A stretch of 64,000 nucleotides of DNA from IMG/VR virus record IMGVR_UViG_3300046171_000252, positions 1 to 64,000 of that record; one strand, given 5' to 3'. This document shows positions 45,242-62,035 of the stretch, piece after piece. A program made the translations under genes and the position numbers. Each line of letters starts with the position of its first letter. Within the stretch, counting starts at the first letter, position 1. Under the pieces are notes generated by a model that was not told the DNA's origin, did not search any database, and saw only the letters and a list, made by a program, of their open reading frames with translations.

Positions 45242-45298
45242 ACCTTTGTCCGGGTTGAAGAGGAAGTCTTAAGACACTATAGAAACCGGTTGCAAAAC

Positions 45299-45339
45299 TG
45301 TCACACCACCTCCTAATCGGGGTGGTTTTCTGCTATAAT
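45299..45339 (+). promoter_or_regulatory. Repeated early-promoter element, copy 1 of 10 (TGNCAC-N29/30-TATAAT with an internal hairpin)
   Basis: TGTCAC 45299, TATAAT 45334; other copies have TGNCAC at 46544, 49058, 49958, 50690, 53901, 60311, 60652, 61391, 61942. Confidence 0.7.
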
Positions 45340-45364
45340 ATATTCATACCAAACAGGACAGCAC

Positions 45365-46540
45365 TTGGTCACCCTTCGCCCACACCAGAAGAAAGCACTG
45401 AATGCAATGCTGGCATATGACAAGGGTCAGGTCATCATCCCTACGGGTGGTGGTAAGACCATGTGTATGATACATGATATTATTGAGAATCAAAAGTATA
45501 TTGATAATGGTTCTACTATTGTTGTTGTAGCACCTCGTATTCTTCTGGCAGAGCAACTCTGCAAAGAGTTTCTTGAAGTGATTGATACTAATCACACTCA
45601 TGTGATGCAGGTTCATAGTGGTGATGTTGAGTATTTCAGCACTACCAAAGCAGACACGATTCACTTGTTTGCCAATACTGCACGGACTGCTGGTGAGAAT
45701 GTCATCATCTTCACCACATATCACTCACTACATCGTCTTGTAGAGGCAGACATTGAAGTGAATACAATTTACTTTGATGAGGCACATAACTCAGTTCAAC
45801 GTAATTTCTTTCCTGCAACTGAGTTCTTCAGTAGCGATTCTGATCGTTGCTATTTCTTTACTGCGACTCCTAAGCACTCGTTGTCTGTATTCAAACCAGG
45901 AATGAATGATCCTGAGGTTTATGGTCAGGTCATTTGTAATGTTCCTGCACCTCAACTTGTCAAAGAAGGTTATATCCTTCCTCCTAAGGTTGTGGTTCAT
46001 CAACTACCTCAGGGTGATTTCAAACTATCTGATGATAAGAATCTGTTGAATACGATTGATGCAAACTCACTCAATAAGATTCTGATTGCAGCACGTTCTA
46101 CTAAGCAGATTCTGCGTATGGTAAGTCAGTCTGATTTTTGTCAGCAATTACATGAGCGTGGATACAACTGGATGTATATTACATCTAAGACCGGTGCAAT
46201 CATCAATGGTAAGAAGGTTTCCCGTGAGGAATTCTTCAAGACCTTGAATACTTGGGGTCAGGATGATACTCGTTTTGTTGTCATGCACCACTCTATCTTG
46301 TCTGAAGGTATCAATGTCAAGGGACTGGAGGCAGTTCTATTCATGCGGAACATGAACTACATTGGAATCAGTCAGTCTATCGGTCGTGTGATCCGTCTGG
46401 GTGGTGCTGAGAAGACCTTTGGACTGGTCTGCGTGCCAGTCTTTGATAAGGTGGGAATCAGCACTGCTAAGAGCGTTCAGGCAGTGGTTGACACCGTATT
46501 TGAGCAGGGTGAACCTGCCATCTCAGTGGTCCGGAAGTAG
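45365..46540 (+). CDS. SF2 DEAH-box helicase (type III restriction Res-like)
   Basis: PTGGGKT, FTTYHSL, YFDEAH, FTATP, LSEGINV, QSIGRVIR. Confidence 0.88.
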   Translation: MVTLRPHQKKALNAMLAYDKGQVIIPTGGGKTMCMIHDIIENQKYIDNGSTIVVVAPRILLAEQLCKEFLEVIDTNHTHVMQVHSGDVEYFSTTKADTIHLFANTARTAGENVIIFTTYHSLHRLVEADIEVNTIYFDEAHNSVQRNFFPATEFFSSDSDRCYFFTATPKHSLSVFKPGMNDPEVYGQVICNVPAPQLVKEGYILPPKVVVHQLPQGDFKLSDDKNLLNTIDANSLNKILIAARSTKQILRMVSQSDFCQQLHERGYNWMYITSKTGAIINGKKVSREEFFKTLNTWGQDDTRFVVMHHSILSEGINVKGLEAVLFMRNMNYIGISQSIGRVIRLGGAEKTFGLVCVPVFDKVGISTAKSVQAVVDTVFEQGEPAISVVRK

Positions 46541-46609
46541 AACTGTCACACCAGGAGCAGAATCCTGCTCCACTCTGCTATAATACAAAAGTAATCAGGG
46601 GAACATCCC

Positions 46610-46750
46610 ATGAAGTGCAAAGTTCAACTCTATGTGTCTGGCACCGTCTTTGATGAGATTGTCATCGCACGGAACTATGAAGAAGCAAGAAAAACTGCAC
46701 TTGCACGCAATCCTACGGCAACAGTTGTAAGTGTTACTGCCGTCTTCTAA
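46610..46750 (+). CDS. Small conserved cyanophage protein, 46 aa
   Basis: Manually translated MKCKVQLYVSG...ARNPTA; follows promoter copy 2 and an AGGGG SD. Confidence 0.65.
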   Translation: MKCKVQLYVSGTVFDEIVIARNYEEARKTALARNPTATVVSVTAVF

Positions 46751-46983
46751 TGAGTGAATCAAAAGATTACCGAAAGTTCTATACTTGTCCCAATAAGGAC
46801 ATTTTAGAAAGCAAAGTTGGGTATCCGAGTGGTTATGTAACCAAGGATGGTATGTGGGCAGCTGTTCCACTTGCAAAATCAAAAAAGTTTGTGATTATCA
46901 ACAACGGATCAATTGTTCACACTTCAAAAAATTATCCATCTGCTGTTTCATACATAGAAAAAAATATGAAGAAAAAACGATGA
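46750..46983 (+). CDS. Hypothetical protein
   Basis: ORF track entry; TAATG coupling. Confidence 0.65.
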   Translation: MSESKDYRKFYTCPNKDILESKVGYPSGYVTKDGMWAAVPLAKSKKFVIINNGSIVHTSKNYPSAVSYIEKNMKKKR

Positions 46984-47177
46984 AGGATCAAAACAGCATT
47001 AAAGATTGTGAAAGCAAACAGGAAAAGTGGAATCGTGGACTTGATATCTTTATTGAATCCGTAATTAAACCTGATGCATCTCTTCGTGATTGTGCTCGTA
47101 ATCAAAAATGTTATCATGAACTGATGGATGTTCGCAATGATGTTTTGGATTATCTCAAAACAAAGAGATGGCAATAA
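46980..47177 (+). CDS. Hypothetical protein
   Basis: ATGA overlap with the previous stop. Confidence 0.65.
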   Translation: MKDQNSIKDCESKQEKWNRGLDIFIESVIKPDASLRDCARNQKCYHELMDVRNDVLDYLKTKRWQ

Positions 47178-47207
47178 TATAACTAATAAAGAACTATAGT
47201 TAAAGTT

Positions 47208-47369
47208 ATGGATCCTGAAGAAATTACTTTAAGTACAACAAGCAGACAATTTACCTATGAAAAGATGTCTCGCAATCTTGATGGTTTAACTCCTGATGAA
47301 TTGAGAGATATGTGTAAATGTTATATGAAACTTTACCTCAAACAACAAGAAGTTCTCAAGACTATATGA
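47208..47369 (+). CDS. Small helical protein, 53 aa, possible NblA-like
   Basis: Manually translated ITLSTTSRQFTYEKMSRNLDGLTPDELRDMCKCYMKLYLKQQEVL; size and pattern resemble the NblA helix-loop-helix. Confidence 0.4.
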   Translation: MDPEEITLSTTSRQFTYEKMSRNLDGLTPDELRDMCKCYMKLYLKQQEVLKTI

Positions 47370-47521
47370 CAGTAAGTACATCATCCTAGGCATAAATTTT
47401 TATTTCAGAAACTTGCAAATGTCAGCAATTCGTGATAAATATTAGGGAGAACTTCGGAGGAACGATGATCTGAAAATTTTTATATTATGTCTTTTGCTTA
47501 TCTAATACATGGAGGTTCATC

Positions 47522-47683
47522 ATGCACAATCTAATATCATTTAATCAATTAGCAGGTTTTAAACTGGATGAAAACAAGTCCGAAATTTCTGATAATTTAA
47601 TCAACGAGTATTATGAATGTCTGGTAGAATGTGACAATAATCAGTCAGTCTGTAAAAGAATCTGTCGGGAGGTTCTAATTTAA
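47522..47683 (+). CDS. Small Cys-rich protein, 53 aa (MHNLISFNQL...YYECLVEC....CKRIC)
   Basis: GGAGGT SD; manually translated. Confidence 0.65.
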   Translation: MHNLISFNQLAGFKLDENKSEISDNLINEYYECLVECDNNQSVCKRICREVLI

Positions 47684-47762
47684 GTTTACACACAGTCAGT
47701 TAGAGGTAAAAATGTTAGTTTATCTGCACCCGCCTTGATTATTCAGAGAATTTAATAAGATT

Positions 47763-47786
47763 AACCCTCGCAAGAGGGTTTTTTTA
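47763..47786 (+). terminator. Intrinsic terminator with GCAA loop
   Basis: AACCCTC-GCAA-GAGGGTT plus T-run. Confidence 0.85.
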
Positions 47787-47830
47787 ATGCAAAGTTGTTA
47801 AATACTTAAAACATCCAAATAAAACTTAAA

Positions 47831-47983
47831 GTGGATTTATCCGACAAAAAAGCATCAAAAAAAATTATCAAAAGATTCAAGAAACACCCTGAGTGGTATA
47901 CACCAGAGGAGGTTTTGTATGCTAAAATGATTAGAAAGCAATTAAAGAAAAATGGAAGACAGTCTGAAAGTAGAACAGAATAA
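47831..47983 (+). CDS. Small basic hypothetical protein, 50 aa, GTG start
   Basis: Manually translated DKKASKKIIKRFKKHPEWYTPEEVLYAKM. Confidence 0.5.
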   Translation: MDLSDKKASKKIIKRFKKHPEWYTPEEVLYAKMIRKQLKKNGRQSESRTE

Positions 47984-48113
47984 AGATGGCACATTCACTA
48001 TAGAATGGGATAATGATGATCCCAGATGGAATTTTTTGAATAACTTGACAAGTAAAGAAATTAGTACTATGATAGAGACCCTAGTCAAAGATAATCTAGA
48101 TGAAACCATTTAA
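47952..48113 (+). CDS. Small hypothetical protein, 53 aa
   Basis: Manually translated MEDSLKVEQNKDGTFTIEWD. Confidence 0.6.
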   Translation: MEDSLKVEQNKDGTFTIEWDNDDPRWNFLNNLTSKEISTMIETLVKDNLDETI

Positions 48114-48507
48114 TGAGCACGAAGATTACTCACTGAATATGTTATCCGATTGGGTTAAGGAATCATTAGAGTCTTCACATACTCCACAACAAGTGTATGA
48201 AACAATTGTAAGAGCTGTCAGGGAGAAAAGAGACTATTATGAAACATGCTATAACCATAGCAAGAAACTTTTAGAACTTCTAAAAGGTGAATTGACACCT
48301 CTGCCAGAACATTATGATGACTTTGAGTGTCCTATTCCAGAGCAAGAAACTATTACTTTTTCGGGACAAGATGGATCTGCAGAATCTTTAAGAAATTGGG
48401 AAAATTTTTGGTATGATGAGAATCATTTAACATTCAATTCTTCTTTACAACAAGAGGTGGATAGAATTGGTAAGGAAGGTGGATATGAATGGACACCAGG
48501 AACCTAG
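48100..48507 (+). CDS. Hypothetical protein
   Basis: ORF track entry. Confidence 0.7.
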   Translation: MKPFNEHEDYSLNMLSDWVKESLESSHTPQQVYETIVRAVREKRDYYETCYNHSKKLLELLKGELTPLPEHYDDFECPIPEQETITFSGQDGSAESLRNWENFWYDENHLTFNSSLQQEVDRIGKEGGYEWTPGT

Positions 48508-48601
48508 CACAATATTTGTAAAGCAATTACAAAGAAAATCTTAAATTACTAACTAATTTTGTGCGGAAACGCTAAAATATCTCAGTAAAAGCAAGACACC
48601 T

Positions 48602-48766
48602 ATGACTCTTCCCCAAAATGGCAAGAAATTGACAGAAATAGAGAAGAAAAGCATGAAAATTGCTTTAAAAGAGGCAGACATTCGTGCAATTCATCCCGAA
48701 AGGATGGAAGCACTTGCTGATTCTATGGTTCAAAGACTCAAGAATAGTGCAAATGTAGCACTTTGA
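48602..48766 (+). CDS. Small hypothetical protein, 54 aa (IHPERMEALA)
   Basis: Manually translated. Confidence 0.6.
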   Translation: MTLPQNGKKLTEIEKKSMKIALKEADIRAIHPERMEALADSMVQRLKNSANVAL

Positions 48767-48811
48767 ACCATTAATCAAAATAAATAAGTAAAACAAATTA
48801 CAAAACTTCGC

Positions 48812-49039
48812 ATGGACACAATCGAGCAGCATATTGAGGTGGATAAACAGATCCTTGACAATCCTCTAACTTCTCCTAATCAACGTCGTCACATTGAAGG
48901 TGAGCTACATGAATTAGAAGATTATGTAGAGCATCATCAGAAAGAAATTGAAGCAGGTGATCATCATGACCCCACCGCACTTGAACTTTATTGTGATTCT
49001 AACCCATCAGAACCTGAATGTAAAGTTTATGAGGACTGA
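48812..49039 (+). CDS. cp12: CP12 Calvin-cycle inhibitor
   Basis: C-terminal LELYCDSNPSEPECKVYED signature. Confidence 0.92.
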   Translation: MDTIEQHIEVDKQILDNPLTSPNQRRHIEGELHELEDYVEHHQKEIEAGDHHDPTALELYCDSNPSEPECKVYED

Positions 49040-49199
49040 TTGAGACAGTTCAATAAGTGTCACAAGGGGGGTTTCATACCCCCCTTTTTCGTGTATATTA
49101 GATGAGTGGAGGGGAGACCCGACACAACACACCCAGAGGCAACACACATAAGAGCAGAGACAAACTTCTGCCGCCTCTCATCCACCTTCTCTTTCTAGC

Positions 49200-49628
49200 A
49201 TGGCAACTCGCTCACGCATTGGCATTCAACTCTCAGATGACTCTATTCTTTCTGTTTATCATCACTGGGATGGTTATCCTACTTGGTTGGGTCGGATTCT
49301 CAAGACGCACTACAATACAAAGGAGAAAGTAGCAGAACTGATTGATGGTGGCGATATGTCATCTTGCTGGACAAAGGATCGCTGGACTGGTAAGCAAGTT
49401 GCAAAATATGTGATCGAAAATGTTGAGGTTGAGGAATATGGTCCTCAGTATTATTCTGCTCGTGGTGAGAGTTGCCCTCCTCGTCTTGATGATGATATCA
49501 CTGAATTTCTGGACAATGGTGAAGAGTATTCTTACATCTTCACTCGTGCTGATGAGTGGATCTGCTACGATTTGCACGACATCACTGGAAAACTGACTGA
49601 GATTCCAGAAGGAGCACTTGCAGTATGA
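49200..49628 (+). CDS. Conserved phage hypothetical protein (YHHWDGYP family)
   Basis: MATRSRIG..YHHWDGYP..LG. Confidence 0.75.
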   Translation: MATRSRIGIQLSDDSILSVYHHWDGYPTWLGRILKTHYNTKEKVAELIDGGDMSSCWTKDRWTGKQVAKYVIENVEVEEYGPQYYSARGESCPPRLDDDITEFLDNGEEYSYIFTRADEWICYDLHDITGKLTEIPEGALAV

Positions 49629-49960
49629 CATCAATGCTTTTCACTTCCGGACAATCATCACACTCACATCTTGCTCAAAGTGTATTTGAGTTCTTTACAT
49701 CACTCTATGGTGTAAAGAGTGATGTTGAAGTATTTCATACAGATCTTACTGATGACAATGCATTTGGTTTTACTGAAATCAATGGTGATGAGCAATTCAT
49801 TCAGATTCATAATAATTTGAATGAGAAGGATTACATTACCACACTATTGCATGAACTTGTTCATGTTGTTCAGAATGAAAATGGTCAGTTTGATGACACT
49901 CGGAGAGAGGAGGAGGCATATGGGTTAGAGTCTATCCTGTTCAACCAGTTCAGGAAGTGA
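49625..49960 (+). CDS. Putative zincin-like metallopeptidase-fold protein
   Basis: TLLHELVHVVQ (HExxH) followed by EEEAY. Confidence 0.6.
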   Translation: MTSMLFTSGQSSHSHLAQSVFEFFTSLYGVKSDVEVFHTDLTDDNAFGFTEINGDEQFIQIHNNLNEKDYITTLLHELVHVVQNENGQFDDTRREEEAYGLESILFNQFRK

Positions 49961-50024
49961 CACAAGGGGCGTTCCACTGCCTCTCCCCATGCTATAATTA
50001 ATTCATACCAAGGGAAACCACCCC

Positions 50025-50291
50025 ATGCAACTCACCAACTCCGTCTGTATCGTTGATTTCTTCCCTGAGGCATTCATTGCCGAGGCAGATCCTATCACAG
50101 GAATGAAGGTTGTTGTTAAGCGTTTCCAGAAGCGTGTTACTTTCCGTGCTAATGGTCAAAAATCTTATAGCACTGTGACTATGCTCACTGCCAAGAATGA
50201 GTGGGCAGAGCGTATTGCCAACGGTGCAACAGTTACTAACTACAACACCGACAAAATGGATCGTTCCGAGTACACTCCAATGGGTTGCTGA
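50025..50291 (+). CDS. Hypothetical early protein
   Basis: Follows promoter copy 4 and an AGGGA SD. Confidence 0.7.
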   Translation: MQLTNSVCIVDFFPEAFIAEADPITGMKVVVKRFQKRVTFRANGQKSYSTVTMLTAKNEWAERIANGATVTNYNTDKMDRSEYTPMGC

Positions 50292-50293
50292 TT

Positions 50294-50440
50294 ATGTTTA
50301 CTACAGAAGACCATGAGTTTATCGATTTTCTCTTCGGTAAACTCACTTGCCTCACTGATACTGAGATGATTGATTTGCACGATGATGATTCTTGTGATGA
50401 TCATCTTCAATTTGAACAACTTACTCTTCCCGAATCATGA
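50294..50440 (+). CDS. Small acidic hypothetical protein, 48 aa
   Basis: Manually translated. Confidence 0.5.
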   Translation: MFTTEDHEFIDFLFGKLTCLTDTEMIDLHDDDSCDDHLQFEQLTLPES

Positions 50441-50685
50441 ACCCACAATTTACTGGTGTATTTACAACGGTCAAAGAGCATGGTGGAGTCTATGCAGTTT
50501 GTACTGAGGGTGAATTATTTTACTCTCCAATGTATGAAGATGGTAGTGTGAATTTTGAGGAGTTTGAAATTGTAGATTTTTGGGATTCTGAAATTGACCC
50601 AGAGGAACTTGAAAAAATTCAATCTGTATTGATTGATATGATGCAGATTGCTGGTCTTTATTTCAAGTCCATGGTGCCAGTTTAA
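50437..50685 (+). CDS. Hypothetical protein
   Basis: ORF track entry; its last codons (CCA GTT TAA) lie in the 84-bp repeat. Confidence 0.65.
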   Translation: MNPQFTGVFTTVKEHGGVYAVCTEGELFYSPMYEDGSVNFEEFEIVDFWDSEIDPEELEKIQSVLIDMMQIAGLYFKSMVPV

Positions 50686-50760
50686 CTAGTGTCACACGGC
50701 ATGTTGAAACCCCATCAGGATGCCCTATAATACATTCATACAAGGGAAACCACCCATGAC
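50677..50760 (+). repeat. 84-bp exact direct repeat, left copy (stop codon, promoter, SD, ATG)
   Basis: Identical to 53888-53971 by direct comparison. Confidence 0.92.
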
Positions 50761-50938
50761 CACCTTTGACTTTGATACAGAATATTACTGGGGTGCTCTC
50801 ATGGTCAAACTGGTTCCCTTGTTTGCCATGGATGTTTACAAAGCATCCGATGATGAGTTGGTATGGGTTTTTGATGTGAACAACCCTGATAATGGGTATC
50901 ATGTTCCTGCTCGCAATCTTTCCACCTATTCTTATTGA
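50756..50938 (+). CDS. Hypothetical protein, 60 aa
   Basis: ATG 50756 and SD lie inside the repeat. Confidence 0.65.
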   Translation: MTTFDFDTEYYWGALMVKLVPLFAMDVYKASDDELVWVFDVNNPDNGYHVPARNLSTYSY

Positions 50939-51237
50939 TTATGTACTCCATCGAAATTATTGAAGAGTTTATCCGCAATCAAATTGCAAAGCCAACTGCC
51001 GATCCTACCATTTTCCGTAGTTGGTATAAGTATGCTAATGCCTCTGGTGAGTGGAATTTAACTAAAGGACATGCACCTGGATTTTGTCGTCTTGCAAAAA
51101 TTGCAGGCAAAAATATCAACGAAGAGTTTGGGTTTGATGTAATCAAGATGCACTTCTATGGTATCTGGAAAAACAATGAGATTAATAATCCCGAATTTAT
51201 GATTTGGGAAAAAGATCACGACTTCACACTGGTTTGA
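50935..51237 (+). CDS. Hypothetical protein
   Basis: ORF track entry; overlaps the previous stop. Confidence 0.65.
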   Translation: MIMYSIEIIEEFIRNQIAKPTADPTIFRSWYKYANASGEWNLTKGHAPGFCRLAKIAGKNINEEFGFDVIKMHFYGIWKNNEINNPEFMIWEKDHDFTLV

Positions 51238-51239
51238 TT

Positions 51240-51920
51240 ATGTCTGACAATCGCCCTACACTTGCAGAAGGATTTGCAAATGCCAAACAATATGAGGGAA
51301 AGAAAGTGGTTGATGTTCTGAGTAACATTACTAGACGCAATAAGGGTTCTGTTGGTAGCGAATTTGAGAAGAAGATTGGTATTCCTAAGTCTTCTGAAAG
51401 ATGTGATTACATTGATAGTGGTGATTGTAAGACTCTAAAATTCAAAAACAACAAACCCGCAGAATGTTGTGATATTATTATGCTTCAAGAGATTCTCCAT
51501 GAAGCGATGAACAACATCTCATTCTATGATAGTGCTGTATATGAAAAGATTCAACAAGTTCATTTTGCACCTATTAACAAGGATGGTGATATTGACGAGT
51601 GGACATTTGGTGAGAACTTTGTAATTTCTAAAGACACTAATCCTGCACTTTACAATCAAATGGAGAAGGATTACAATCATATCACTGAACGTATTCGCAC
51701 TCTAGTTAATTCTGGTCAGTATATTAGTGCTAGTGATGTGAATCAACGTTCGGCAGTTAAAATCCTTGAGATTCGTCCCAAGGGTGCAGGTGGTGGTTCA
51801 AGTAGAAACACTTGGAATGGTGTTGTTATCACCAAACCAGATGCACAATCTGCTTATTCTTATTACTTTAAGCAATCTGGTGTCAAGTACATCTACAACA
51901 ACCGATTGACAAATAATTAA
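51240..51920 (+). CDS. MutH/Sau3AI-family PD-(D/E)XK endonuclease
   Basis: NKGSVGSEFEKKIG..DY..GDCKTLK matches the MutH KG.G..E..D..E-x-K layout; LEIRPKGA motif; SYYFKQS. Confidence 0.65.
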   Translation: MSDNRPTLAEGFANAKQYEGKKVVDVLSNITRRNKGSVGSEFEKKIGIPKSSERCDYIDSGDCKTLKFKNNKPAECCDIIMLQEILHEAMNNISFYDSAVYEKIQQVHFAPINKDGDIDEWTFGENFVISKDTNPALYNQMEKDYNHITERIRTLVNSGQYISASDVNQRSAVKILEIRPKGAGGGSSRNTWNGVVITKPDAQSAYSYYFKQSGVKYIYNNRLTNN

Positions 51921-51934
51921 AAACCTGCTACACT
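51906..51934 (+). promoter_or_regulatory. Sigma70-type promoter TTGACA-N17-TACACT with extended TG
   Basis: Consensus -35 and correct spacing; upstream of the 52008 ORF and methylase. Confidence 0.7.
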
Positions 51935-52007
51935 GAATACATCGACAGAATACTCAACCATTACCGAGTTCTGTTATTCCTAACCATTATCCGGAAGCAT
52001 TACCACT

Positions 52008-53390
52008 ATGAAAACTATTTCATTCACAAAACAAAAAACTTGGAAAGAGAAAGTAGTTGACCAAGTTGTCAACACAGAGAAAAAATCTTTCAATACCAAA
52101 ATAAAAATTTTTGGAGAACTTCTTGTTCGTAAGGGAAATCGTTGGGTAAAGAGTACCGACCCAGTTACGATGCAAAGAGATTCTTCAAAGAGAGCAAAAA
52201 CTGATATTGTTGATGCTTATTATTTCAAAAAGAATCCAAACACAGATCGATGTCGTGGATATGATCATACTGCATCAAATATGGGAAATACTCTCATAGT
52301 TACTACCAAAGACATTGTTGATACTTTTGGTGAAAAAATTCCTGCCTTTAGTATCCTTCAACTTAACGGAAATACCAACCTTGTTGCTCAGTGTCAACTT
52401 CTCAATGGTGATATTACTATTCCTAATGATTATCAACTGAGTGATTTCATTGCATCAAAAGATGAAGAATTAGATTTTAATGTAATAGTCATTAGCAATC
52501 AAGCAGATTATAATTTTTACTATAAAATTGTTGACAATACTGTTAGTGCTAAATCAAAAGATGACAACTATTCTTCTTGCTTAGTTGGTCATAAACTTCT
52601 CAATTATGAAACTGGAGAAACAGATCTCATTACTTGGGTAACAAGAGCAATGGATCGACCTCTTTCATATTTGAATCTTAGTGCTGTTCCCAAAGATATT
52701 CCTGAGATGAATAAAATCTTCTCAGAATATAAGGGAGTAATTGTTAATGTAAGAGAAGAAACATCACCCATTGTCAACAATGGTGGCAGCAATCAATCTG
52801 TCTGGAAAGCATTTTGTTTAGACCTTTCTAAACTTGAACTTTCTGGAAAACTTTCTCCTCTTCAACTTTCTTCAGTCCTTGACAATCTAGGAAAAGAAAT
52901 TACCCAAGCATCTGACAAAAATGTTGAAGAATATTGGAACAATAAATTCTTTGGCATTAAGAAGAAACGAGGTTCTTCAATGATTGACACTAAACTTACA
53001 AATTTCAATAAATTTGTTTGTTCTCCAAAGTCTTCATGGACTCAACTAAGTTTTACTATTGAAGACTGGATTCTTTGGGAATTGTTTAGTGTAACTCGTG
53101 ATGATATTCGGGATGCACAAGATCATCGTCTTTATGGTCACGGCGGTGGTGACATTCTTGGTGGAAAAGATAGAACTGACGTTGCACATCAATCACTCAA
53201 CTTTTTAAGAACAATGTTGTTGTATGCTAATCACATTAACTTCGAAAGTCGTTTTACTGCTATTAAAGCATTTGAGTGGGCAGAAGAGAACATTTGCACG
53301 AAATTTGCAGCGGTTGACCAAGTTGATCGTCTTGACATTCTTGCAGATAAAAAAGTAAAATTAGCACTAAAGTCTCACATTTATTCATGA
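52008..53390 (+). CDS. Hypothetical protein, 460 aa
   Basis: Long ORF coupled (ATGA) to the methylase; no family recognised. Confidence 0.8.
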   Translation: MKTISFTKQKTWKEKVVDQVVNTEKKSFNTKIKIFGELLVRKGNRWVKSTDPVTMQRDSSKRAKTDIVDAYYFKKNPNTDRCRGYDHTASNMGNTLIVTTKDIVDTFGEKIPAFSILQLNGNTNLVAQCQLLNGDITIPNDYQLSDFIASKDEELDFNVIVISNQADYNFYYKIVDNTVSAKSKDDNYSSCLVGHKLLNYETGETDLITWVTRAMDRPLSYLNLSAVPKDIPEMNKIFSEYKGVIVNVREETSPIVNNGGSNQSVWKAFCLDLSKLELSGKLSPLQLSSVLDNLGKEITQASDKNVEEYWNNKFFGIKKKRGSSMIDTKLTNFNKFVCSPKSSWTQLSFTIEDWILWELFSVTRDDIRDAQDHRLYGHGGGDILGGKDRTDVAHQSLNFLRTMLLYANHINFESRFTAIKAFEWAEENICTKFAAVDQVDRLDILADKKVKLALKSHIYS

Positions 53391-53896
53391 CATCATCCAC
53401 ACTCAAAGTATTAACAGCAAGCACAGGTAATCGTAAAGACACATGGAACACTCCCCCCGAATTTGTGGGGGATGTTGTTAAGTTCTTCGGTGGTAGGATT
53501 GGATTAGACCCGTGCTCTAATAGTATGGATGAACCTAATGTTCCTGCCGACAAAGTTTATACTGAAGAAATGGATGGACTTCAACAAAGTTGGGTTGCTG
53601 ATAGTGTTTTCATGAATCATCCATATTCTGCTAGTAAAAAATGGATTCCCCATGCTGCTGCCCAATACGAAAATGGAAATGCGAAAGAAATGGTTCTTCT
53701 CATTAAGTTGGACGTTTCTACCAAATGGTGGAGATCTATTGAGAAATATCCATGGATAGGAGTCAATAGACGGTTAAGATTCGGTGCTGCCAAAAGTGCA
53801 GCACCATTTCAGTCTGCTATCATATACCTTGGGACTGATCTTGACCGATTTAAGAACACTTTTGGTAAGTATGGAACCCTTTATGCACCAGTTTAA
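53387..53896 (+). CDS. Phage DNA N6-adenine methyltransferase (Dam-like, PF05869 type)
   Basis: DTWNTPP, LDPCS, DGLQQSW, VFMNHPY (motif IV variant), TKWW. Confidence 0.85.
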   Translation: MTSSTLKVLTASTGNRKDTWNTPPEFVGDVVKFFGGRIGLDPCSNSMDEPNVPADKVYTEEMDGLQQSWVADSVFMNHPYSASKKWIPHAAAQYENGNAKEMVLLIKLDVSTKWWRSIEKYPWIGVNRRLRFGAAKSAAPFQSAIIYLGTDLDRFKNTFGKYGTLYAPV

Positions 53897-53971
53897 CTAG
53901 TGTCACACGGCATGTTGAAACCCCATCAGGATGCCCTATAATACATTCATACAAGGGAAACCACCCATGAC
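53888..53971 (+). repeat. 84-bp exact direct repeat, right copy
   Basis: Identical to 50677-50760. Confidence 0.92.
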
Positions 53972-54832: not shown

Positions 54833-54982
54833 CTGCCACACACAAACTAATCTTTATAGCATCTTTCATGTGGTTTATGAATTGGGGAACACGACTCACC
54901 TATTCTCTTCTGAGTGGATTATGATTGAAATTCCTCCATTGACATGTGGTATAAATTAAAGTAAAATAGTAGCACACTTGAG

Positions 54983-55457: not shown

Positions 55458-55731
55458 TGACTATGTTATTTGGAATCATAATGGTTTAGTTCATAAGGGT
55501 TGGGTGTATTTTGTGGATGAAATGTATATTACGATTGAGACTGGTATCAAACCAAAACCTAATTGTCAATATACAAAGAATGAGAAACACAAATACATTC
55601 ATACACTCTTACTATGTCATCCACACTATTGGAAAGATTTAGAGTATGTTTATACAAGGAAGAATAAGTACGGCAAAACCTTAGATGAGATGGATACATA
55701 CAATCGGTTTGATAATGTTGAGGTAGATTAA
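55429..55731 (+). CDS. Hypothetical protein
   Basis: ORF track entry. Confidence 0.65.
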   Translation: MNMHYTPKVDDYVIWNHNGLVHKGWVYFVDEMYITIETGIKPKPNCQYTKNEKHKYIHTLLLCHPHYWKDLEYVYTRKNKYGKTLDEMDTYNRFDNVEVD

Positions 55732-55735
55732 ATTT

Positions 55736-56855: not shown

Positions 56856-56887
56856 ATAAATAAATATGGGTAAAAACTGTTTCTGTA

Positions 56888-58069: not shown

Positions 58070-58090
58070 TTGAAAGTATGATATAATAGT

Positions 58091-58429
58091 ATGATGAATG
58101 ATGTGAAACTATCAACAATTGTATTTCGTTTTCTGGATGAATTCTTTTTACAGGAAGCATCCGGAAAGGAATGGAGAGCATCAAAGAACTGTCAAAAGGA
58201 AAGGTGGTCAATTTGTGATGGATGTGAGTACTTTGATGAACCCGAAGAAGGATGTAAGTATTGTGGATGTTATCTACCACATAAGATAAAGGATCCATTT
58301 GGTGATTGTCCATTGGATAAGTGGATATCAAATAGTGAGCAGTGGTATGATGAGGACTATGATTATCTCAAACAATTAATTATTGAAAAGAACCCAGAAC
58401 TGAAGGAGTATTTGAATGGAAACAGTTGA
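58091..58429 (+). CDS. Cys-rich small protein (DUF6171-like)
   Basis: R..ICDGC...CKYCGCYL..K....CP..KW. Confidence 0.7.
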   Translation: MMNDVKLSTIVFRFLDEFFLQEASGKEWRASKNCQKERWSICDGCEYFDEPEEGCKYCGCYLPHKIKDPFGDCPLDKWISNSEQWYDEDYDYLKQLIIEKNPELKEYLNGNS

Positions 58430-59018
58430 ACTCAAAGGTGAATATCATGATTTTATAGGAACATATTCGAATGTATATGATTCTAAGTTCTGTGATAGTA
58501 TTATAAAGTCTTTTGATTATTATCAGGATATTGATGCAGTCTTCTGTGAAGATAATCAATTTGAGAACAGTAATGCCGGACGATTTGATTGGGCATTAGA
58601 TTTGGCAGAGATGAATCCTGCAATGAAAGATAATCAGTCACAATTGTTAAATGAGACATTACAACCATGTTTTGATGAATATGTAAATGTCTTCGGTCAT
58701 CTAAAGACTGTACCAATGTATTCACTCTCACAGAAGATACAGAAGACTCCTGCCGGTGGTGGTTATCATGTCTGGCACGATGAGAACTCAAACTTAGAAC
58801 AATCCAATCGTTGTCTTGTATGGATGATCTATTTGAATGATGATTATCAGGGTGGAGAAACAGAGTTCCTATATTATAAGAAAAGAATACAACCTGAGAA
58901 GGGAAAGTTATTAATATGGCCCGCAGGTATGACACATTGCCATAGAGGAGGATTAGTATTGGAAGGAACAAAGTATATTGCAACAGGTTGGTTCTATCTG
59001 GCAAATTACAATGGATGA
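58416..59018 (+). CDS. 2OG-Fe(II) oxygenase, P4Hc-like
   Basis: GYHVWHDE, WMIYLND..GGETEF, GKLLIWPA..THCHRG, KYIATGW. Confidence 0.85.
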   Translation: METVELKGEYHDFIGTYSNVYDSKFCDSIIKSFDYYQDIDAVFCEDNQFENSNAGRFDWALDLAEMNPAMKDNQSQLLNETLQPCFDEYVNVFGHLKTVPMYSLSQKIQKTPAGGGYHVWHDENSNLEQSNRCLVWMIYLNDDYQGGETEFLYYKKRIQPEKGKLLIWPAGMTHCHRGGLVLEGTKYIATGWFYLANYNG

Positions 59019-59283
59019 TAATAATAATAAGGAAGAGTTTCCTACAATTAAGGAACAAGGAAAGAGTCTTGCAAAGTTTACATTTGAAGTGGTTAAGGAT
59101 AGTGTATTCAATCTATCACCAGGAGAAGTATTCGCAAGTGATGAATTAAAGAAAGAACGATTGGATATATGTAAGAAGTGTGAGTATTATAGTATGAGAC
59201 AGAATAGATGTAAACACTGTGGTTGTTGGTTAGAACATAAGGTTAAGTTCAAGGTAAGTGAGTGTCCTATCTACAAATGGTGA
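59011..59283 (+). CDS. Second Cys-rich small protein (DUF6171-like)
   Basis: RLDICKKC...CKHCGCWL..K....CP..KW. Confidence 0.7.
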   Translation: MDDNNNKEEFPTIKEQGKSLAKFTFEVVKDSVFNLSPGEVFASDELKKERLDICKKCEYYSMRQNRCKHCGCWLEHKVKFKVSECPIYKW

Positions 59284-59540
59284 ATGATAATGAATGCTTG
59301 GTGAGAGAGGTAATTAAGGTATGGAAGTATACTCTGGGTAGTTTTAATGATGAAAAGACTGAGAGATATGATAATATTATTTGTATTCTAAGAACGGGTA
59401 TATTACTGACTTATCTGTTGACGAATGTCTTTATTGTGGCAGGAGTGGTGAGACATTGGGACACTTCGCGTCCCTCACCCCTTCGGGATTGGAATCAGAG
59501 TAAAAGTGTATCCATTGATACAGAATACATTAAAAAATAG
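59280..59540 (+). CDS. Hypothetical membrane protein
   Basis: KVWKYTLGSFNDEKT, hydrophobic segment. Confidence 0.55.
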   Translation: MNDNECLVREVIKVWKYTLGSFNDEKTERYDNIICILRTGILLTYLLTNVFIVAGVVRHWDTSRPSPLRDWNQSKSVSIDTEYIKK

Positions 59541-59584
59541 GTTTTAAATAGTATTATAAATATAAAACTGTTTTTTAACAAGGT

Positions 59585-59645
59585 TGTGGAAAAGTGTATT
59601 ATTTGTGTGGATAAACCCTAATATTAGATGTTTATCTGTGGAAAA
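59585..59645 (-). other. Cluster of three DnaA-box-like 9-mers beside an AT-rich tract
   Basis: TGTGGATAA 59606-59614 (TTATCCACA on minus strand); TGTGGAAAA at 59585 and 59637. Confidence 0.45.
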
Positions 59646-59891
59646 CTATGAGTATAGTATCTTCTAAGTATCTTCTAAACATCAGATCTTATGCAAGTTT
59701 AGCGAGCGTATCATGGAGAGCGCGGTTTGTCAACCCACGGGGCGCGAAATTTTTCTCGACGAGATATAAATTGTAACATAAAGACATCTTATAGTATAAA
59801 TATATTGATTATAAATCTCGTCTAGATCTTACACTTGACATAGAACGAGATTACATGATATAATCATACAATAGATATCTCGACGAGAACC

Positions 59892-60071
59892 ATGAACGAC
59901 TACGAGACATTCTACATATGGGACTACGAGACATCATGTCATGATACTCGCGACGAGATGTATATGCTCGACGAGATGCATCATGATACACAATACACAT
60001 ATGATCTAGATGATGAATATGCACGAGATAGCACAGACTATCAAGCACTTGCATATAGACATTACGCATGA
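59892..60071 (+). CDS. Small acidic hypothetical protein, 59 aa
   Basis: Manually translated ...DLDDEYARDSTDYQALAYRHYA; TTGACA-N18-TATAAT upstream at 59835-59864. Confidence 0.5.
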   Translation: MNDYETFYIWDYETSCHDTRDEMYMLDEMHHDTQYTYDLDDEYARDSTDYQALAYRHYA

Positions 60072-60101
60072 TATAATACGTAAACATCACACGAGATACA
60101 C

Positions 60102-60254
60102 ATGTACGCACAGAAACGAATTGTGAGTGTTACATTAGACATTGAGTGTTATGAAGATCTAGATGTAGAGAATATCGATTGGACTGATATTCTAGGTCTA
60201 GAAGGTGATGAACATATTGACATTAGTATAAAAGAAACAGTTAACAACTACTAG
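60102..60254 (+). CDS. Small hypothetical protein, 50 aa
   Basis: Manually translated. Confidence 0.55.
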   Translation: MYAQKRIVSVTLDIECYEDLDVENIDWTDILGLEGDEHIDISIKETVNNY

Positions 60255-60403
60255 TGTGTCAGTTTGTAGATTGGCACACTTAAACTAGTGTCTTGTGGCA
60301 ATCGAACTAGTGTCACACGGTTTTGGCACAGACCTGAAAATCGTGTATTGTTATTTTTGTGGGTCGAAAATGTTACCTACTTCCCCACAAATTCTTTTCA
60401 CAA

Positions 60404-60622
60404 ATGAACAACACAATTCTCGTAATTCTTCACACTTTGAACATTCTGGCATTCGTGATAGAAATTGCCACAGAATCTGCAGTTCGTGTCATCGCACTTG
60501 CAATTGTCCTGGGTGAGTATACCTGGACCGGCGCACAAGTTCTTTACAACAATCGTCGTGAAATCCTGGAGAACATTAACATTTTTCGTGAGACCGTTGG
60601 ATCTTACTTTGTGTATGCATGA
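60404..60622 (+). CDS. Hypothetical protein
   Basis: Follows promoter copy 7. Confidence 0.6.
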   Translation: MNNTILVILHTLNILAFVIEIATESAVRVIALAIVLGEYTWTGAQVLYNNRREILENINIFRETVGSYFVYA

Positions 60623-60717
60623 TAAGTAACACCATGTGCCAAAAGTACTAGTGGCACAGTAAATGAGCACAGACCCCAAAATCGTGTATTGTAGTTAAGT
60701 CATCAGGAATTCACCAA

Positions 60718-60957
60718 ATGCAAGGTTACAACGGTTGGGCAAATTGGGAGACCTGGAATGTTGCTCTCTGGATCGGAAATGATCCTGGTTTGTATGAACT
60801 GGCATGTGAAACTGCAAGGGATGGTGGAACTTATGGTCATCTGGTGAGTATGATTCACGATTGTGGAAGTAAAGAAACACCAGACGGATGTAAGTGGGAC
60901 GATATAAAGATAGACGGAATACGGATAAATGAAATGATGAAAGAACTTGTAGACTAA
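60718..60957 (+). CDS. Conserved phage hypothetical protein (YNGW.NWETW family)
   Basis: YNGWANWETWNVALWIGND; follows promoter copy 8. Confidence 0.75.
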   Translation: MQGYNGWANWETWNVALWIGNDPGLYELACETARDGGTYGHLVSMIHDCGSKETPDGCKWDDIKIDGIRINEMMKELVD

Positions 60958-60999
60958 GTAACCCTTACTCAACTCACACTAACTAACACTTTTTTTCAA

Positions 61000-61149
61000 A
61001 TGGATTACGACACTTTCGACACTGACATTTTCTCTGAGATTAATGACATGCCCGGAGAGATTTATGATGTGATTGAATACAAGGAAGAATATGAAGATGA
61101 TAAGAAGTTTGATGTAGAAAAATATATTGAAGGAAATACAGACTACTAA
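61000..61149 (+). CDS. Small acidic hypothetical protein, 49 aa
   Basis: Manually translated. Confidence 0.5.
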   Translation: MDYDTFDTDIFSEINDMPGEIYDVIEYKEEYEDDKKFDVEKYIEGNTDY

Positions 61150-61185
61150 GTAACACTCACTCATTCACCCCTATTTGATACTACC

Positions 61186-61341
61186 ATGACCGAACTTGAA
61201 ATGCAAGCAATTGAAGTCCTTGAAATCGTTGAGGATTCAGTAGAATACATTTGTGGCGAACATGTTATCAGTGGAGAAAAGGTCTGGACTATGGTAGCAG
61301 CACTTGCCGATGCCAAACTTGCACAATTCCCTGATAATTGA
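61186..61341 (+). CDS. Small hypothetical protein, 51 aa
   Basis: Manually translated. Confidence 0.55.
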   Translation: MTELEMQAIEVLEIVEDSVEYICGEHVISGEKVWTMVAALADAKLAQFPDN

Positions 61342-61455
61342 GAGACTAAGTAACACAAACCATTCGGCCGCCCGTGGACGGTTGAGTTAGTGTCACACGA
61401 TTTTGGCACTACCCTCAAAACCGTGTATTGTAGAAGGGTGAAAGAAATCAACCAA

Positions 61456-61671
61456 ATGCAGACCTACACCGACCCTTGCACCTATGCCATGCAAAGTGAC
61501 ATGCGCCAACTGAAAGAGATGATCGCATCAGACCTTGCAAACTACATGCTGGAAATGATGCCACCACTTGACATGTGCGTCGATTGGGTATGTGATCGTT
61601 TTGCACTGAATGCAACCGACGAACTGATTGATTTCGTTGCTGATTGTCATGATGAGTTCTTCGGTAACTGA
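61456..61671 (+). CDS. Hypothetical protein
   Basis: Follows promoter copy 9. Confidence 0.6.
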   Translation: MQTYTDPCTYAMQSDMRQLKEMIASDLANYMLEMMPPLDMCVDWVCDRFALNATDELIDFVADCHDEFFGN

Positions 61672-62035
61672 TACAAACCTATGAAATTTACCATCGTTAA
61701 GTTCAAAGGTCGTTGGGTCAAAGTATCCAACAAACTATCACCCCCGACTGAATGGGTTACAGTCATCAACAAAGCAAACCTTAAGTAACACAAACTCATG
61801 CGTATTTGTCTTTCTGCCATTGTGATTTTGTTGGGTGCCAATCTTCTCATCGATTTGTTAGATTCTGATATGGTACAAATCATGCAAGAGCGTAACGAAA
61901 CAATCCAGCGCAGCATAGACCGCATGTGACAGTCGGACTAGTGCCACACGGTTTCGTTTTGGACCTTAAAACCGTGTATTGTATAGAAGTGGAGGGGACA
62001 ACGCCCGCCACACGCTCTAAACCTCTTCTCTTCTC

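What the first reader, a model, noticed from the sequence alone, without database searches (positions are those of the whole stretch)
45283..61982. Ten copies of a palindrome / hairpin / -10 promoter cassette with fixed spacing
Seen: TGNCAC at 45299, 46544, 49058, 49958, 50690, 53901, 60311, 60652, 61391 and 61942. Each lies 29 or 30 nt before a -10 hexamer (TATAAT, TATATT or TATTGT). Five copies have a left half exactly 10 nt upstream (GAGACA 49042, GTGCCA 50674, GTGGCA 60295, GTGCCA 60636, GTGACA 61926), giving the inverted repeat GTGNCA-N10-TGNCAC. Copies 1-6 have a stem-loop between palindrome and -10 (e.g. GGAGCAG/CTGCTCC) in place of a -35. Known: PeSL cassettes in RB49-like T4 phages mediate modular shuffling, and I recall an unexplained upstream motif in Syn9 early promoters (not verified). 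Inference: an activator-dependent early regulon bound by a dimeric factor, doubling as recombination joints.
Basis: partly seen in the sequence, partly recalled or inferred. Interest (0 to 1): 0.7.

Follow-up and report, generated by a model that had tools for sequence, protein, structure and literature searches.

The report
Cyanophage early promoter-terminator shuffling cassettes
The ten repeats are real: they are short promoter-plus-hairpin cassettes in front of small genes of a marine T4-like cyanophage. They carry a conserved 24-bp palindrome upstream, and related phages gain and lose gene modules exactly at them, so this is a cyanophage version of elements known from coliphages.

Summary
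TGNCAC-N29/30-TATWNT occurs exactly ten times on the + strand at the stated coordinates. It occurs 0 times on the - strand, against 0.36 expected by chance.

The window is the first 64 kb of a 207.6-kb T4-like cyanomyovirus genome from seawater. Each cassette has four parts:
- a 24-bp imperfect palindrome, TGnGMCAGTT-N4-AASTGKCACA, centred near -53;
- a 29-30-bp spacer holding a hairpin (class 1) or a conserved T.GGCA -35-like box (class 2);
- a -10 box;
- an ~18-nt leader with ribosome-binding site and start codon of a small conserved phage gene.

The same cassette is present in Syn9 and in hundreds of marine viral contigs. It is not enriched in five marine Synechococcus genomes.

At least 11 of 16 indels between this phage and close relatives have breakpoints inside cassettes, and chimeric cassettes are visible at base level. 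Cassettes 5 and 6 are an 84-bp exact repeat flanking a 3.1-kb module that a relative lacks.

This matches PeSL-type modular shuffling. It probably also matches the 'novel early regulatory element' reported for Syn9, but that paper was not readable here. No transcription start data could be obtained, and the factor that binds the palindrome is inferred only.

The parts
45282..45339 (+). Cassette 1 (class 1). Palindrome 45282-45305, terminator-like hairpin CCACCTCC/GGGGTGG plus TTTT in spacer 45305-45333, TGC-TATAAT 45334-45339. It precedes the UvsW-like helicase gene (TTG start 45365).
46527..46584 (+). Cassette 2 (class 1). Palindrome 46527-46550 overlaps the helicase stop codon (ORF ends 46540). 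Hairpin GGAGCAG/CTGCTCC, TATAAT 46579-46584, then ATG 46610 (phrog_685).
49041..49099 (+). Cassette 3 (class 1). Palindrome 49041-49064, G6/C6 hairpin plus T5 (best terminator-like hit of the region), TATATT 49094-49099. A long leader beginning AGATGAGTGGAGGGGA follows.
49941..49998 (+). Cassette 4 (class 1). Palindrome 49941-49964, with the TGA of TGACAC serving as the stop codon of the upstream ORF. Hairpin, TATAAT 49993-49998, ATG 50025 (phrog_500).
50673..50731 (+). Cassette 5 (class 1). Palindrome 50673-50696, TTGAAA-16-TATAAT (50726-50731), ATG 50756. It is part of the 84-bp exact repeat 50677-50760.
53884..53942 (+). Cassette 6 (class 1). Palindrome 53884-53907, TATAAT 53937-53942, ATG 53967 (phrog_818). 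It is part of the 84-bp exact repeat 53888-53971, the second copy of 50677-50760.
50761..53887 (+). 3.1-kb gene module between the two 84-bp repeat copies. It includes a Dam-type methyltransferase gene (53387-53896). It is absent from relative L023, which has one chimeric cassette instead, and has lower depth than its flanks in two seawater metagenomes.
60255..60278 (.). Extra palindrome without a -10 box (GTGTCA-N10-TGGCAC), 39 nt upstream of cassette 7. It scores better on the - strand.
60294..60351 (+). Cassette 7 (class 2). Palindrome 60294-60317, TTGGCA 17 bp before TATTGT (60346-60351), conserved spacer CAGACCTGAAAATCGTG.
60635..60692 (+). Cassette 8 (class 2). Palindrome 60635-60658 (GTGCCA-N10-TGGCAC), TATTGT 60687-60692, ATG 60718 (phrog_871).
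61374..61431 (+). Cassette 9 (class 2). Palindrome 61374-61397, TTGGCA-17-TATTGT (61426-61431), ATG 61456 (phrog_10297).
61925..61982 (+). Cassette 10 (class 2). Palindrome 61925-61948, TATTGT 61977-61982, a 53-nt stretch beginning ATAGAAGTGGAGGGGA, ATG 62036 (phrog_554).

Best explanation
These are composite terminator-promoter cassettes at the head of small-gene transcription units in the variable (hyperplastic) region of a marine T4-like cyanophage.

Shown:
- The anatomy: a 24-bp imperfect palindrome, a fixed 29-30-bp spacer, a -10 box, an ~18-nt leader, a ribosome-binding site and a start codon.
- Strict co-orientation with the genes.
- Conservation across cyanomyovirus genera, including Syn9.
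- Their role as the places where gene modules are gained, lost and swapped between related phages.

Inferred:
- Host RNA polymerase with its primary sigma factor starts about 7 nt after the -10 box right after infection. It relies on the -10 (often with an adjacent TG) and a weak or variant -35.
- A dimeric DNA-binding protein sits on the palindrome centred near -53 and helps recruit the polymerase. This is probably not a host regulator with its own host regulon, and it may be delivered with the virion.
- The hairpin in the spacer ends or stabilises transcripts coming from the upstream gene.
- Because the same 60-100 bp recur every 1-3 kb in one orientation, ordinary homologous recombination between copies, within a genome or between co-infecting phages, deletes, inserts and exchanges the modules between them.
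For: Anatomy and statistics:
- 10 matches against 0.36 expected, all on the + strand; profile E-values 2e-13 to 9e-9.
- The gap to the -10 is 29-30 nt in 87 of 98 non-redundant cassettes.
- The -10 consensus is TATAAT, TATATT or TATTGT with invariant T1, A2 and T6. The start codon lies 24-26 nt after the -10 in at least five of the ten window cassettes.
- The downstream ORFs belong to PHROG families.

Palindrome:
- In 48 non-redundant copies C(-12) is present in 47/48, G(+1) in 48/48 and A(-2) in 48/48, and the mirror-symmetric consensus spans 24 bp.
- There is no covariation at the degenerate mirrored positions: A-G 11, C-T 10, C-G 9, A-T 8.

Hairpin:
- 40 of 48 spacers fold at -5 kcal/mol or better (mean z -2.8).
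- 12 of the 37 spacers reaching -5 kcal/mol in a spacer-only refold are followed by a T-run.
- Copies 1 and 3 are the top terminator-like hits.
- U-G intermediates and one compensated pair occur among orthologues.

Conservation:
- The same cassette occurs in Syn9 at 46.3, 48.6, 51.0, 51.2, 53.0, 127.5 and 148.8 kb, ahead of gp63, gp73, gp78, gp79 and gp89/90.
- 117 profile hits in 752 kb and 202 in 543 kb of related viral contigs, all but 6 on the gene strand.
- The exact class-2 core is in 115 IMG/VR contigs.

Recombination:
- At least 11 of 16 distinct indels of 150 bp or more, against relatives of 85% identity or more, have a breakpoint inside a cassette.
- Base-level chimeras are visible at cassettes 2, 3 and 4.
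- L023 has a single cassette made of the left flank of cassette 5 and the right flank of cassette 6.
- There is an 84-bp exact repeat.
- Paralogous cassettes within a genome share variants that their orthologues lack.
- The repeat assembles as a separate contig of double depth in the probable source metagenome.
- Joints that skip genes between cassettes 7-10 appear in contigs from other samples.

Host check:
- The palindrome with up to 3 mismatches occurs 1-8 times per marine Synechococcus genome, against 16-24 for the control pattern. It occurs 7 times in the 0.21-Mb phage genome.
Against: - There is no direct evidence of transcription starts. Metatranscriptome contigs cross several cassettes and come from diverged strains.
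- Public Syn9 RNA data could not be used.
- 'Early' rests on my memory of the abstract of Doron et al. 2016 (ISME J 10:1437), which is not held in the library. The identity of their motif with this one is therefore unverified.
- Only a third of the hairpins have a T-run, and + strand and - strand folds are equally stable (p 0.30). The terminator role is therefore not general.
- In five copies the left arm of the palindrome lies in the coding end of the upstream gene and is much less conserved than the right arm. The apparent symmetry could therefore be partly incidental.
- Module boundaries would tend to lie near promoters even without cassette-driven recombination.
Confidence: 0.55

Rival explanations
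1. These are ordinary primary-sigma promoters with no dedicated factor. The polymerase uses the -10, the adjacent TG and a weak -35, and perhaps contacts the upstream DNA with its alpha subunits. The palindrome and spacer stay alike only because the cassettes keep homogenising each other by recombination.
For: A weak TTG..A signal lies 17 bp from the -10. Class 2 has T.GGCA-17-TATTGT, and cassettes 5 and 6 have TTGAAA-16-TATAAT. Concerted evolution of paralogous copies is visible. Marine picocyanobacterial promoters often lack a clear -35 (my own knowledge).
Against: Conservation is position-specific. C(-12), A(-2), G(+1), C(+3) and C(+5) are nearly invariant while neighbouring positions vary freely. 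This holds across 98 copies of under 80% identity and between Syn9 and this phage. The 29-30-bp spacing is kept although the spacer sequences differ. Canonical TTGACA/TATAAT promoters in the same region have no palindrome.
Confidence: 0.2
2. The palindrome is an operator for a phage-made protein that switches these promoters off, or otherwise modulates them, later in infection. It is not an activator site.
For: It is a palindromic protein-type site without covariation. It is specific to the phage and not enriched in host genomes. A double palindrome lies upstream of cassette 7.
Against: The site lies at -64 to -41, upstream of the core promoter. Repressors seldom act from there alone. The fixed phase with the -10 box suggests contact with the polymerase.
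Confidence: 0.15
3. The palindrome is the target of a site-specific nuclease or recombinase. Breaks or strand exchange there make the cassettes mobile, and the promoter is a passenger.
For: Indel breakpoints cluster at the cassettes, several within or next to the palindrome. T4-like phages carry homing-type endonucleases (PMC2988022, title only; my own knowledge).
Against: Breakpoints are spread from -49 to +64 relative to TGNCAC rather than sitting at one point. That fits homologous exchange along the shared sequence, as in PeSL mini-circles (PMC2839356). The fixed spacing to the -10 has no role in this model.
Confidence: 0.07
4. The palindrome acts in RNA, as a hairpin at the 3' end of upstream transcripts or as a processing site.
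For: Positions -12/+1 and -11/0 can pair in 47 or 48 of 48 copies if G-U pairs are allowed.
Against: Mirrored positions -13/+2 and -10/-1 show no covariation and are unpaired in most copies, so no stable stem forms. No Rfam family matches the region.
Confidence: 0.03

Closest known systems
PeSL cassettes (promoter-early stem-loops) of T4-type phages RB49/phi1, T4/PST and KVP40/nt-1 (Arbiol et al. 2010, PMC2839356; Comeau et al. 2014, PMC4122927)
   Same: Both follow the same order: stop codon of the upstream gene, an upstream element, a sigma70-type promoter with an embedded stem-loop, a Shine-Dalgarno sequence, and the start codon of a small ORF. Both are dense in the hyperplastic region and lie in one orientation. 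In both, indels and replacements between close relatives are bounded by cassettes, and a single chimeric cassette sits where a relative has two.
   Different: The upstream element here is a conserved, GC-containing 24-bp palindrome instead of an AT-rich tract. The -35 is weak or a variant (T.GGCA) rather than near-consensus TTGACA. The host is a cyanobacterium. Mini-circles are untested. A 2015 study of cyanophage S-PM2 judged PeSL-type shuffling unlikely for its ORFan region (PMC4503421).
'Novel regulatory element' of early genes of cyanophage Syn9 and other T4-like cyanophages (Doron et al. 2016, ISME J 10:1437; from memory of the abstract, paper not held)
   Same: The cassette found here is present in Syn9 ahead of runs of small genes (gp63-, gp73-, gp78-, gp79-, gp89/90-). 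It is abundant in marine viral contigs, as that paper states for its element. Canonical host-like promoters form a second class in the same region.
   Different: I could not read the published motif or its start-site list, so identity is likely but unverified. I do not know whether the palindrome, the hairpin or the recombination role are described there.
Activator-dependent cyanobacterial promoters that lack a -35, such as NtcA sites (GTA-N8-TAC near -41.5), which also occur in cyanophage genomes (PMC3037559)
   Same: Both have a -10 box without a good -35, plus a palindromic site upstream at a fixed distance.
   Different: The sequence is not GTA-N8-TAC. The centre is near -53, not -41.5. 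No host sites were found.
T4 MotA/AsiA middle promoters
   Same: In both, a phage-specific box replaces normal -35 recognition in a T4-type phage.
   Different: The Mot box is a non-palindromic motif at about -30. Cyanophages lack motA and asiA (my own knowledge). Here the box lies further upstream and is symmetric.

Membership tests
PeSL (promoter-early stem-loop) cassettes | Intergenic, between small ORFs of a hyperplastic region, co-oriented with the genes, with the upstream stop codon and the downstream SD and start codon as part of the unit | tested here: met
   All ten copies are on the gene strand. The upstream stop codon lies inside or within 4 nt of the palindrome in copies 2 and 4-6 (18 nt upstream of TGNCAC in copy 3). 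The start codon lies 24-26 nt after the -10.
PeSL (promoter-early stem-loop) cassettes | Sigma70-like -35 and -10 boxes about 17 bp apart | tested here: inconclusive
   The -10 is clear. The -35 is only weak in class 1 (T 18-22/47, A 33/47 at the expected positions) and is a variant T.GGCA in class 2. Copies 5 and 6 have TTGAAA-16-TATAAT.
PeSL (promoter-early stem-loop) cassettes | Stable stem-loop within or next to the promoter | tested here: met
   40 of 48 non-redundant spacers fold at -5 kcal/mol or better (mean z -2.8). G-rich and C-rich arms flank the -35 position.
PeSL (promoter-early stem-loop) cassettes | [quoted passage not shown] | tested here: not met
   That place is taken by the conserved palindrome TGnGMCAGTT-N4-AASTGKCACA.
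PeSL (promoter-early stem-loop) cassettes | Indels and replacements between close relatives bounded by cassettes, with chimeric single cassettes | tested here: met
   At least 11 of 16 events have a breakpoint in a cassette, with base-level chimeras.
PeSL (promoter-early stem-loop) cassettes | Excised mini-circles formed during infection | not testable with these tools
   This needs inverse PCR on infected cells or virions.
Early-gene regulatory element of T4-like cyanophages (Doron et al. 2016) | Lies upstream of mapped early transcription start sites | not testable with these tools
   Only assembled metatranscriptome contigs were available, and they were uninformative.
Early-gene regulatory element of T4-like cyanophages (Doron et al. 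2016) | Conserved and abundant among T4-like cyanophages and in marine metagenomes | tested here: met
   Present in Syn9, in 160 related IMG/VR loci and in 115 contigs with the exact class-2 core.
Early-gene regulatory element of T4-like cyanophages (Doron et al. 2016) | Sequence agrees with the published motif | not tested
   The paper is not held in the library.
NtcA-activated promoters | GTA-N8-TAC centred near -41.5 | tested here: not met
   The consensus is CAGTT-N4-AASTG flanked by GTG/CAC, centred near -53.
Sigma-54 promoters | TGGCAC-N5-TTGCW with the start 12 nt downstream | tested here: not met
   After TGGCAC-N5 the class-2 copies read TTCGG or TTTGG, not TTGC. The gene starts fit the TATAAT/TATTGT box 29-30 nt further on. 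Cyanobacteria lack rpoN (my own knowledge).

The most novel reading that the evidence does not exclude
A so far unidentified dimeric DNA-binding protein recognises the 24-bp palindrome at about -53. It either arrives with the virion or is a host protein with no host regulon of its own. It stands in for -35 recognition and so defines the immediate-early regulon of marine T4-like cyanophages. The same 60-100-bp cassettes are the crossover points that move ORFan modules among co-infecting cyanophages in the sea.
Probability: 0.3. Interest if true: 0.65.

Novelty: new variant of a known kind. Interest (0 to 1): 0.45.

Why it matters
T4-like cyanophages are among the most abundant viruses in the ocean. 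How they start their infection programme without the T4 factors Alt, MotA and AsiA is not settled.

This analysis gives a defined 24-bp palindrome with fixed phase to the -10 box, present across genera and absent from host genomes. That is a concrete bait for finding the missing factor.

The base-level evidence that gene modules are exchanged at these cassettes extends the PeSL shuffling model from enterobacterial and vibrio phages to marine cyanophages. It explains how their ORFan-rich regions turn over, and it offers portable promoter parts for cyanobacterial work.

Tried and rejected
- First scan with the spacing read as start-to-start (N23-24): it missed all ten sites, and the gap is 29-30.
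- Palindrome as an RNA or DNA hairpin: rejected, because the degenerate mirrored positions do not covary.
- Sense-strand RNA hairpin test by comparing folds of the two strands: no difference (p 0.30).
- Alignment-based covariation of the cassette-2 hairpin: only one compensated pair, so weak.
- Host regulon: the palindrome is not enriched in five marine Synechococcus genomes.
- Rfam: no match at E up to 1.
- Start sites from metatranscriptome contigs: the contigs are from diverged strains, cross the cassettes and give no ends.
- Doron et al. 2016 and the S-PM2 genome paper: not held. Several citing papers do not describe the motif.
- One IMG/VR scan used a wrong gap length and found almost nothing. 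The corrected scan is.
- BLAST of one cassette against isolate phages is too insensitive for a short motif: 13 records.
- NtcA, sigma-54, CRP-type, LexA-type and CIRCE consensus sequences, compared from memory: none fits.

Full report
**What the window is.** The window is the first 64 kb of a single 207,616-bp contig with 37% G+C. BLAST places it among T4-like Synechococcus myoviruses, with no close isolate. Its DNA is found in seawater metagenomes. Between 45 and 63 kb nearly all genes lie on the + strand. They are a UvsW-type helicase, a Dam-type methyltransferase, several 2OG-Fe(II) oxygenases, a DUF6267 protein and many small ORFs that belong to PHROG families of unknown function. This is the kind of variable region that in T4-type phages holds early genes.

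**The observation.** The stated 29 or 30 nt is the gap between the end of TGNCAC and the start of the -10 hexamer. A first scan that read it as start-to-start found none of them.

The pattern TGNCAC-N29-30-TATWNT occurs ten times on the + strand of the window, exactly at the ten sites, and not once on the - strand. In 200 dinucleotide-preserving shuffles the mean count was 0.36 and the maximum 3.

A profile made from the ten copies re-finds them in the whole genome at E 2e-13 to 9e-9. It finds one weaker copy at 113504, again on the + strand. The five left halves and the hairpins of copies 1-6 are as described. Copies 1 and 3 are the two best intrinsic-terminator-like sites of the region.

**Anatomy from many copies.** I fetched 160 related loci from IMG/VR, half around the helicase gene and half around the DUF6267 gene.
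- The profile gave 117 hits in 752 kb, all on the gene strand, and 202 hits in 543 kb, of which 196 were on the gene strand.
- After removing near-duplicates, 48 copies from the first set plus the window, and later 98 from both sets, were compared without gaps, anchored on TGNCAC.
- The upstream consensus is T G n G M C A G T T - (G A A n) - A A S T G K C A C A. This is a 24-bp imperfect palindrome whose centre lies 5.5 nt upstream of TGNCAC.
- Its strongest positions are mirror images: C at -12 (47/48) and G at +1 (48/48), A at -11 and T at 0, T at -9 and A at -2 (48/48).
- The right arm is better kept than the left. In copies 2-6 the left arm lies in the last codons of the upstream gene or just past its stop codon.
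- At the degenerate mirrored positions the two sides vary independently. For -13/+2 the counts are A-G 11, C-T 10, C-G 9 and A-T 8. This is what a site for a symmetric protein looks like, not a stem.
- The gap to the -10 box is 29 or 30 nt in 87 of 98 copies. With the -10 hexamer at -12 to -7, the palindrome centre sits near -53.

**The spacer and the two classes.** In class 1 (window copies 1-6) the spacer sequence differs from copy to copy, but 40 of 48 fold at -5 kcal/mol or better, with a mean z of -2.8 against shuffles.
- A G-rich arm lies at -40 to -38 and a C-rich arm at -27 to -22. The loop falls on the -35 position, where a weak TTG..A signal is seen.
- In a spacer-only refold, 12 of the 37 hairpins at -5 kcal/mol or better are followed by a T-run.
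- Among orthologues of cassette 2 the stem shows U-G intermediates and one compensated pair.
- The two strands fold equally well. The RNA-level role is therefore supported only where a T-run is present.

In class 2 (copies 7-10 and most copies near the DUF6267 gene) the spacer itself is conserved. It reads T.GGCA, then CAGACCYCAAAAYCGTG, then TATTGT. This gives a -35-like hexamer 17 bp from the -10 box.

After the -10 box come a few recurrent leader types with a ribosome-binding site. The start codon lies 24-26 nt after the -10 in at least five of the ten window copies. Canonical TTGACA-17/18-TATAAT promoters without any palindrome also occur in the region, for example at 59835 and 54939. Two promoter types are therefore interleaved.

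**Conservation beyond close relatives.** Syn9, a member of another genus, carries the same cassette: GTGCCAGTT-N6-AGTGKCAC, about 29 nt, then CGTGTATTCT or TGCTATAAT. It occurs at about 46.3, 48.6, 51.0, 51.2, 53.0, 127.5 and 148.8 kb. The first five lie ahead of runs of small hypothetical genes starting with gp63, gp73, gp78, gp79 and gp89/90. The exact class-2 core (21 specified bases) is found in 115 IMG/VR contigs.

From memory, the abstract of Doron et al. 2016 (ISME J 10:1437) says three things: a novel regulatory element controls early-gene transcription in Syn9, host-like promoters drive middle genes, and these elements are abundant among T4-like cyanophages. What I see fits that description. 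The paper is not in the library and the citing papers I could read do not give the motif. Identity is therefore likely but unverified.

**Is there a host regulon?** The full palindrome with up to three mismatches occurs 1-8 times in each of five marine Synechococcus genomes. That is fewer than the control pattern (16-24), and no site has fewer than two mismatches. The 0.21-Mb phage genome has seven such sites and Syn9 eight. The site is therefore a phage feature. If a host protein binds it, that protein does not use it widely in the host. The region matches no Rfam family.

**Recombination joints.** I aligned the window with relatives of 85% identity or more and listed every break of collinearity of 150 bp or more. 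This gave about 16 distinct events between 45 and 62.4 kb, and at least 11 of them have a breakpoint inside a cassette. Only about 10 of some 43 gene junctions carry a cassette.

The base-level picture is the same each time. Where a relative has an extra module, that module is flanked by two cassette-like elements. The window's single cassette matches the left one up to somewhere between the palindrome and the -10 box, and the right one from there on. This holds for:
- cassette 2 against L025-L027;
- cassette 3 against L023 and L027;
- cassette 4 against L017, L018 and L023.

The reverse case lies in the window itself. Cassettes 5 and 6 contain an 84-bp exact direct repeat (50677-50760 and 53888-53971) around a 3.1-kb module that includes the methyltransferase gene. 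L023 has one cassette with the left flank of cassette 5 and the right flank of cassette 6.

Further support:
- The two copies in the window share variants (CCCCATC) that differ from those shared by the two copies in L017 (CTCCTTC). The copies of one genome therefore keep exchanging sequence.
- In the probable source metagenome the repeat assembles as a separate 84-bp contig at twice the depth of its flanks. In two other samples the module is several-fold rarer than its flanks.
- Contigs from other samples join cassette 7 to cassette 8. They also carry other joints that begin or end in or beside cassettes 7-10, or at the start of a downstream gene, skipping the genes between.
- Breakpoints are spread from -49 to +64 relative to TGNCAC. 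This fits homologous exchange along the shared sequence rather than cutting at one point.

**Comparison with what is known.** PeSL cassettes of RB49/phi1, T4/PST and KVP40/nt-1 have the same layout and the same evolutionary behaviour. The layout is an upstream stop codon, an upstream element, a sigma70-type promoter with a stem-loop that often lies between or over the boxes, a Shine-Dalgarno sequence and a start codon.

The present cassettes differ in three ways. A conserved palindrome stands where PeSLs have an AT-rich tract. The -35 is weak or a variant. The host is a cyanobacterium. The PeSL papers do not mention cyanophages. A study of S-PM2 looked for PeSLs around its ORFan region and thought the mechanism unlikely there.

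I therefore file this as a cyanophage variant of the PeSL kind that most likely uses the early-promoter element already reported for Syn9. It is neither an NtcA site nor a sigma-54 promoter (see the membership rows).

**What is shown and what is inferred.**
- Shown: the repeat family, its anatomy and spacing, its orientation and position relative to genes, its conservation, its absence from host genomes, and its coincidence with module boundaries, including chimeric cassettes.
- Inferred: that transcription starts after the -10 boxes, that it is early, that a dimeric protein binds the palindrome and activates, and that the hairpins end upstream transcripts.
- No transcription start data could be obtained. 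The metatranscriptome runs are held only as assembled contigs from diverged strains.

**Verdict.** It is a new variant of known kinds of element rather than a new kind. Its main value is the sharply defined palindrome as a handle on the unknown early-transcription factor of marine cyanophages, together with clear evidence for cassette-mediated module exchange in these phages.

Noticed in passing
window 59835-59864, 54939-54967, 48045-48073: Canonical TTGACA-17/18-TATAAT-type promoters with AT-rich upstream DNA and no palindrome lie among the cassettes. This is a second promoter class in the same region, perhaps the host-like middle promoters reported for Syn9.
   Followed up: partly
window 60255-60278: A further palindrome (GTGTCA-N10-TGGCAC) without its own -10 box lies 39 nt upstream of cassette 7. 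Together with cassette 7's palindrome it forms a tandem pair of sites.
   Followed up: partly
window 49100-49199 and 61983-62035: Cassettes 3 and 10, and many copies in relatives, are followed by a shared leader beginning A.A..AGTGGAGGGGA. The distance to the first ATG is unusually long (about 100 and 53 nt), and the leader can pair with a CT-rich tract just before the start codon. It may be a structured 5' leader.
   Followed up: partly
genome 161665-161735 (outside the window; L354:166-236): A nearly perfect palindrome GTGCCAG-N8-CTGGCAC directly abuts a canonical TTGACT-17-TATAAT promoter. Its gap to the -10 is shorter (25 nt). Syn9 has a similar site at 165790 with the same kind of leader.
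   Followed up: partly
genome 113487-113545 (outside the window; L353): An eleventh full cassette with a terminator-like hairpin and TATTAT lies far from the others. It precedes a 704-aa ORF without a Pfam match, which is followed by an AAA_5 ATPase gene.
   Followed up: partly
genome 162365-163386 (L354:866-1887): Two adjacent ORFs of 168 and 156 aa match the N-terminal and C-terminal halves of NAD-dependent epimerase/dehydratase. An intact 347-aa paralogue lies next to them. This could be a split or frameshifted gene.
   Followed up: no
window 50924-53683: The stretch from about 50.9 to 53.7 kb, which includes the Dam-type methyltransferase gene, has several-fold lower depth than its flanks in two seawater metagenomes. 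Several contigs diverge exactly at 50943, which is a module boundary that is not at a cassette.
   Followed up: partly
window 37333-42822: A 1829-aa ORF ends in a Peptidase_S74 (endosialidase chaperone) domain. It is probably a tail fibre with an intramolecular chaperone.
   Followed up: no
L023:7650-7720, L027:5110-5180: Some cassette-like elements in relatives keep the inner palindrome CAGTT-N4-AACTGG but have TGGTTC or TGGAGT instead of TGNCAC. The profile misses them, so the family is larger and more varied than the counts given.
   Followed up: no
phage records HQ633071/NC_020851 (S-SKS1): BLAST of cassette 9 also hits Synechococcus phage S-SKS1, a 208-kb phage reported as a siphovirus (my own knowledge). 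The cassette may not be confined to T4-like myoviruses.
   Followed up: no
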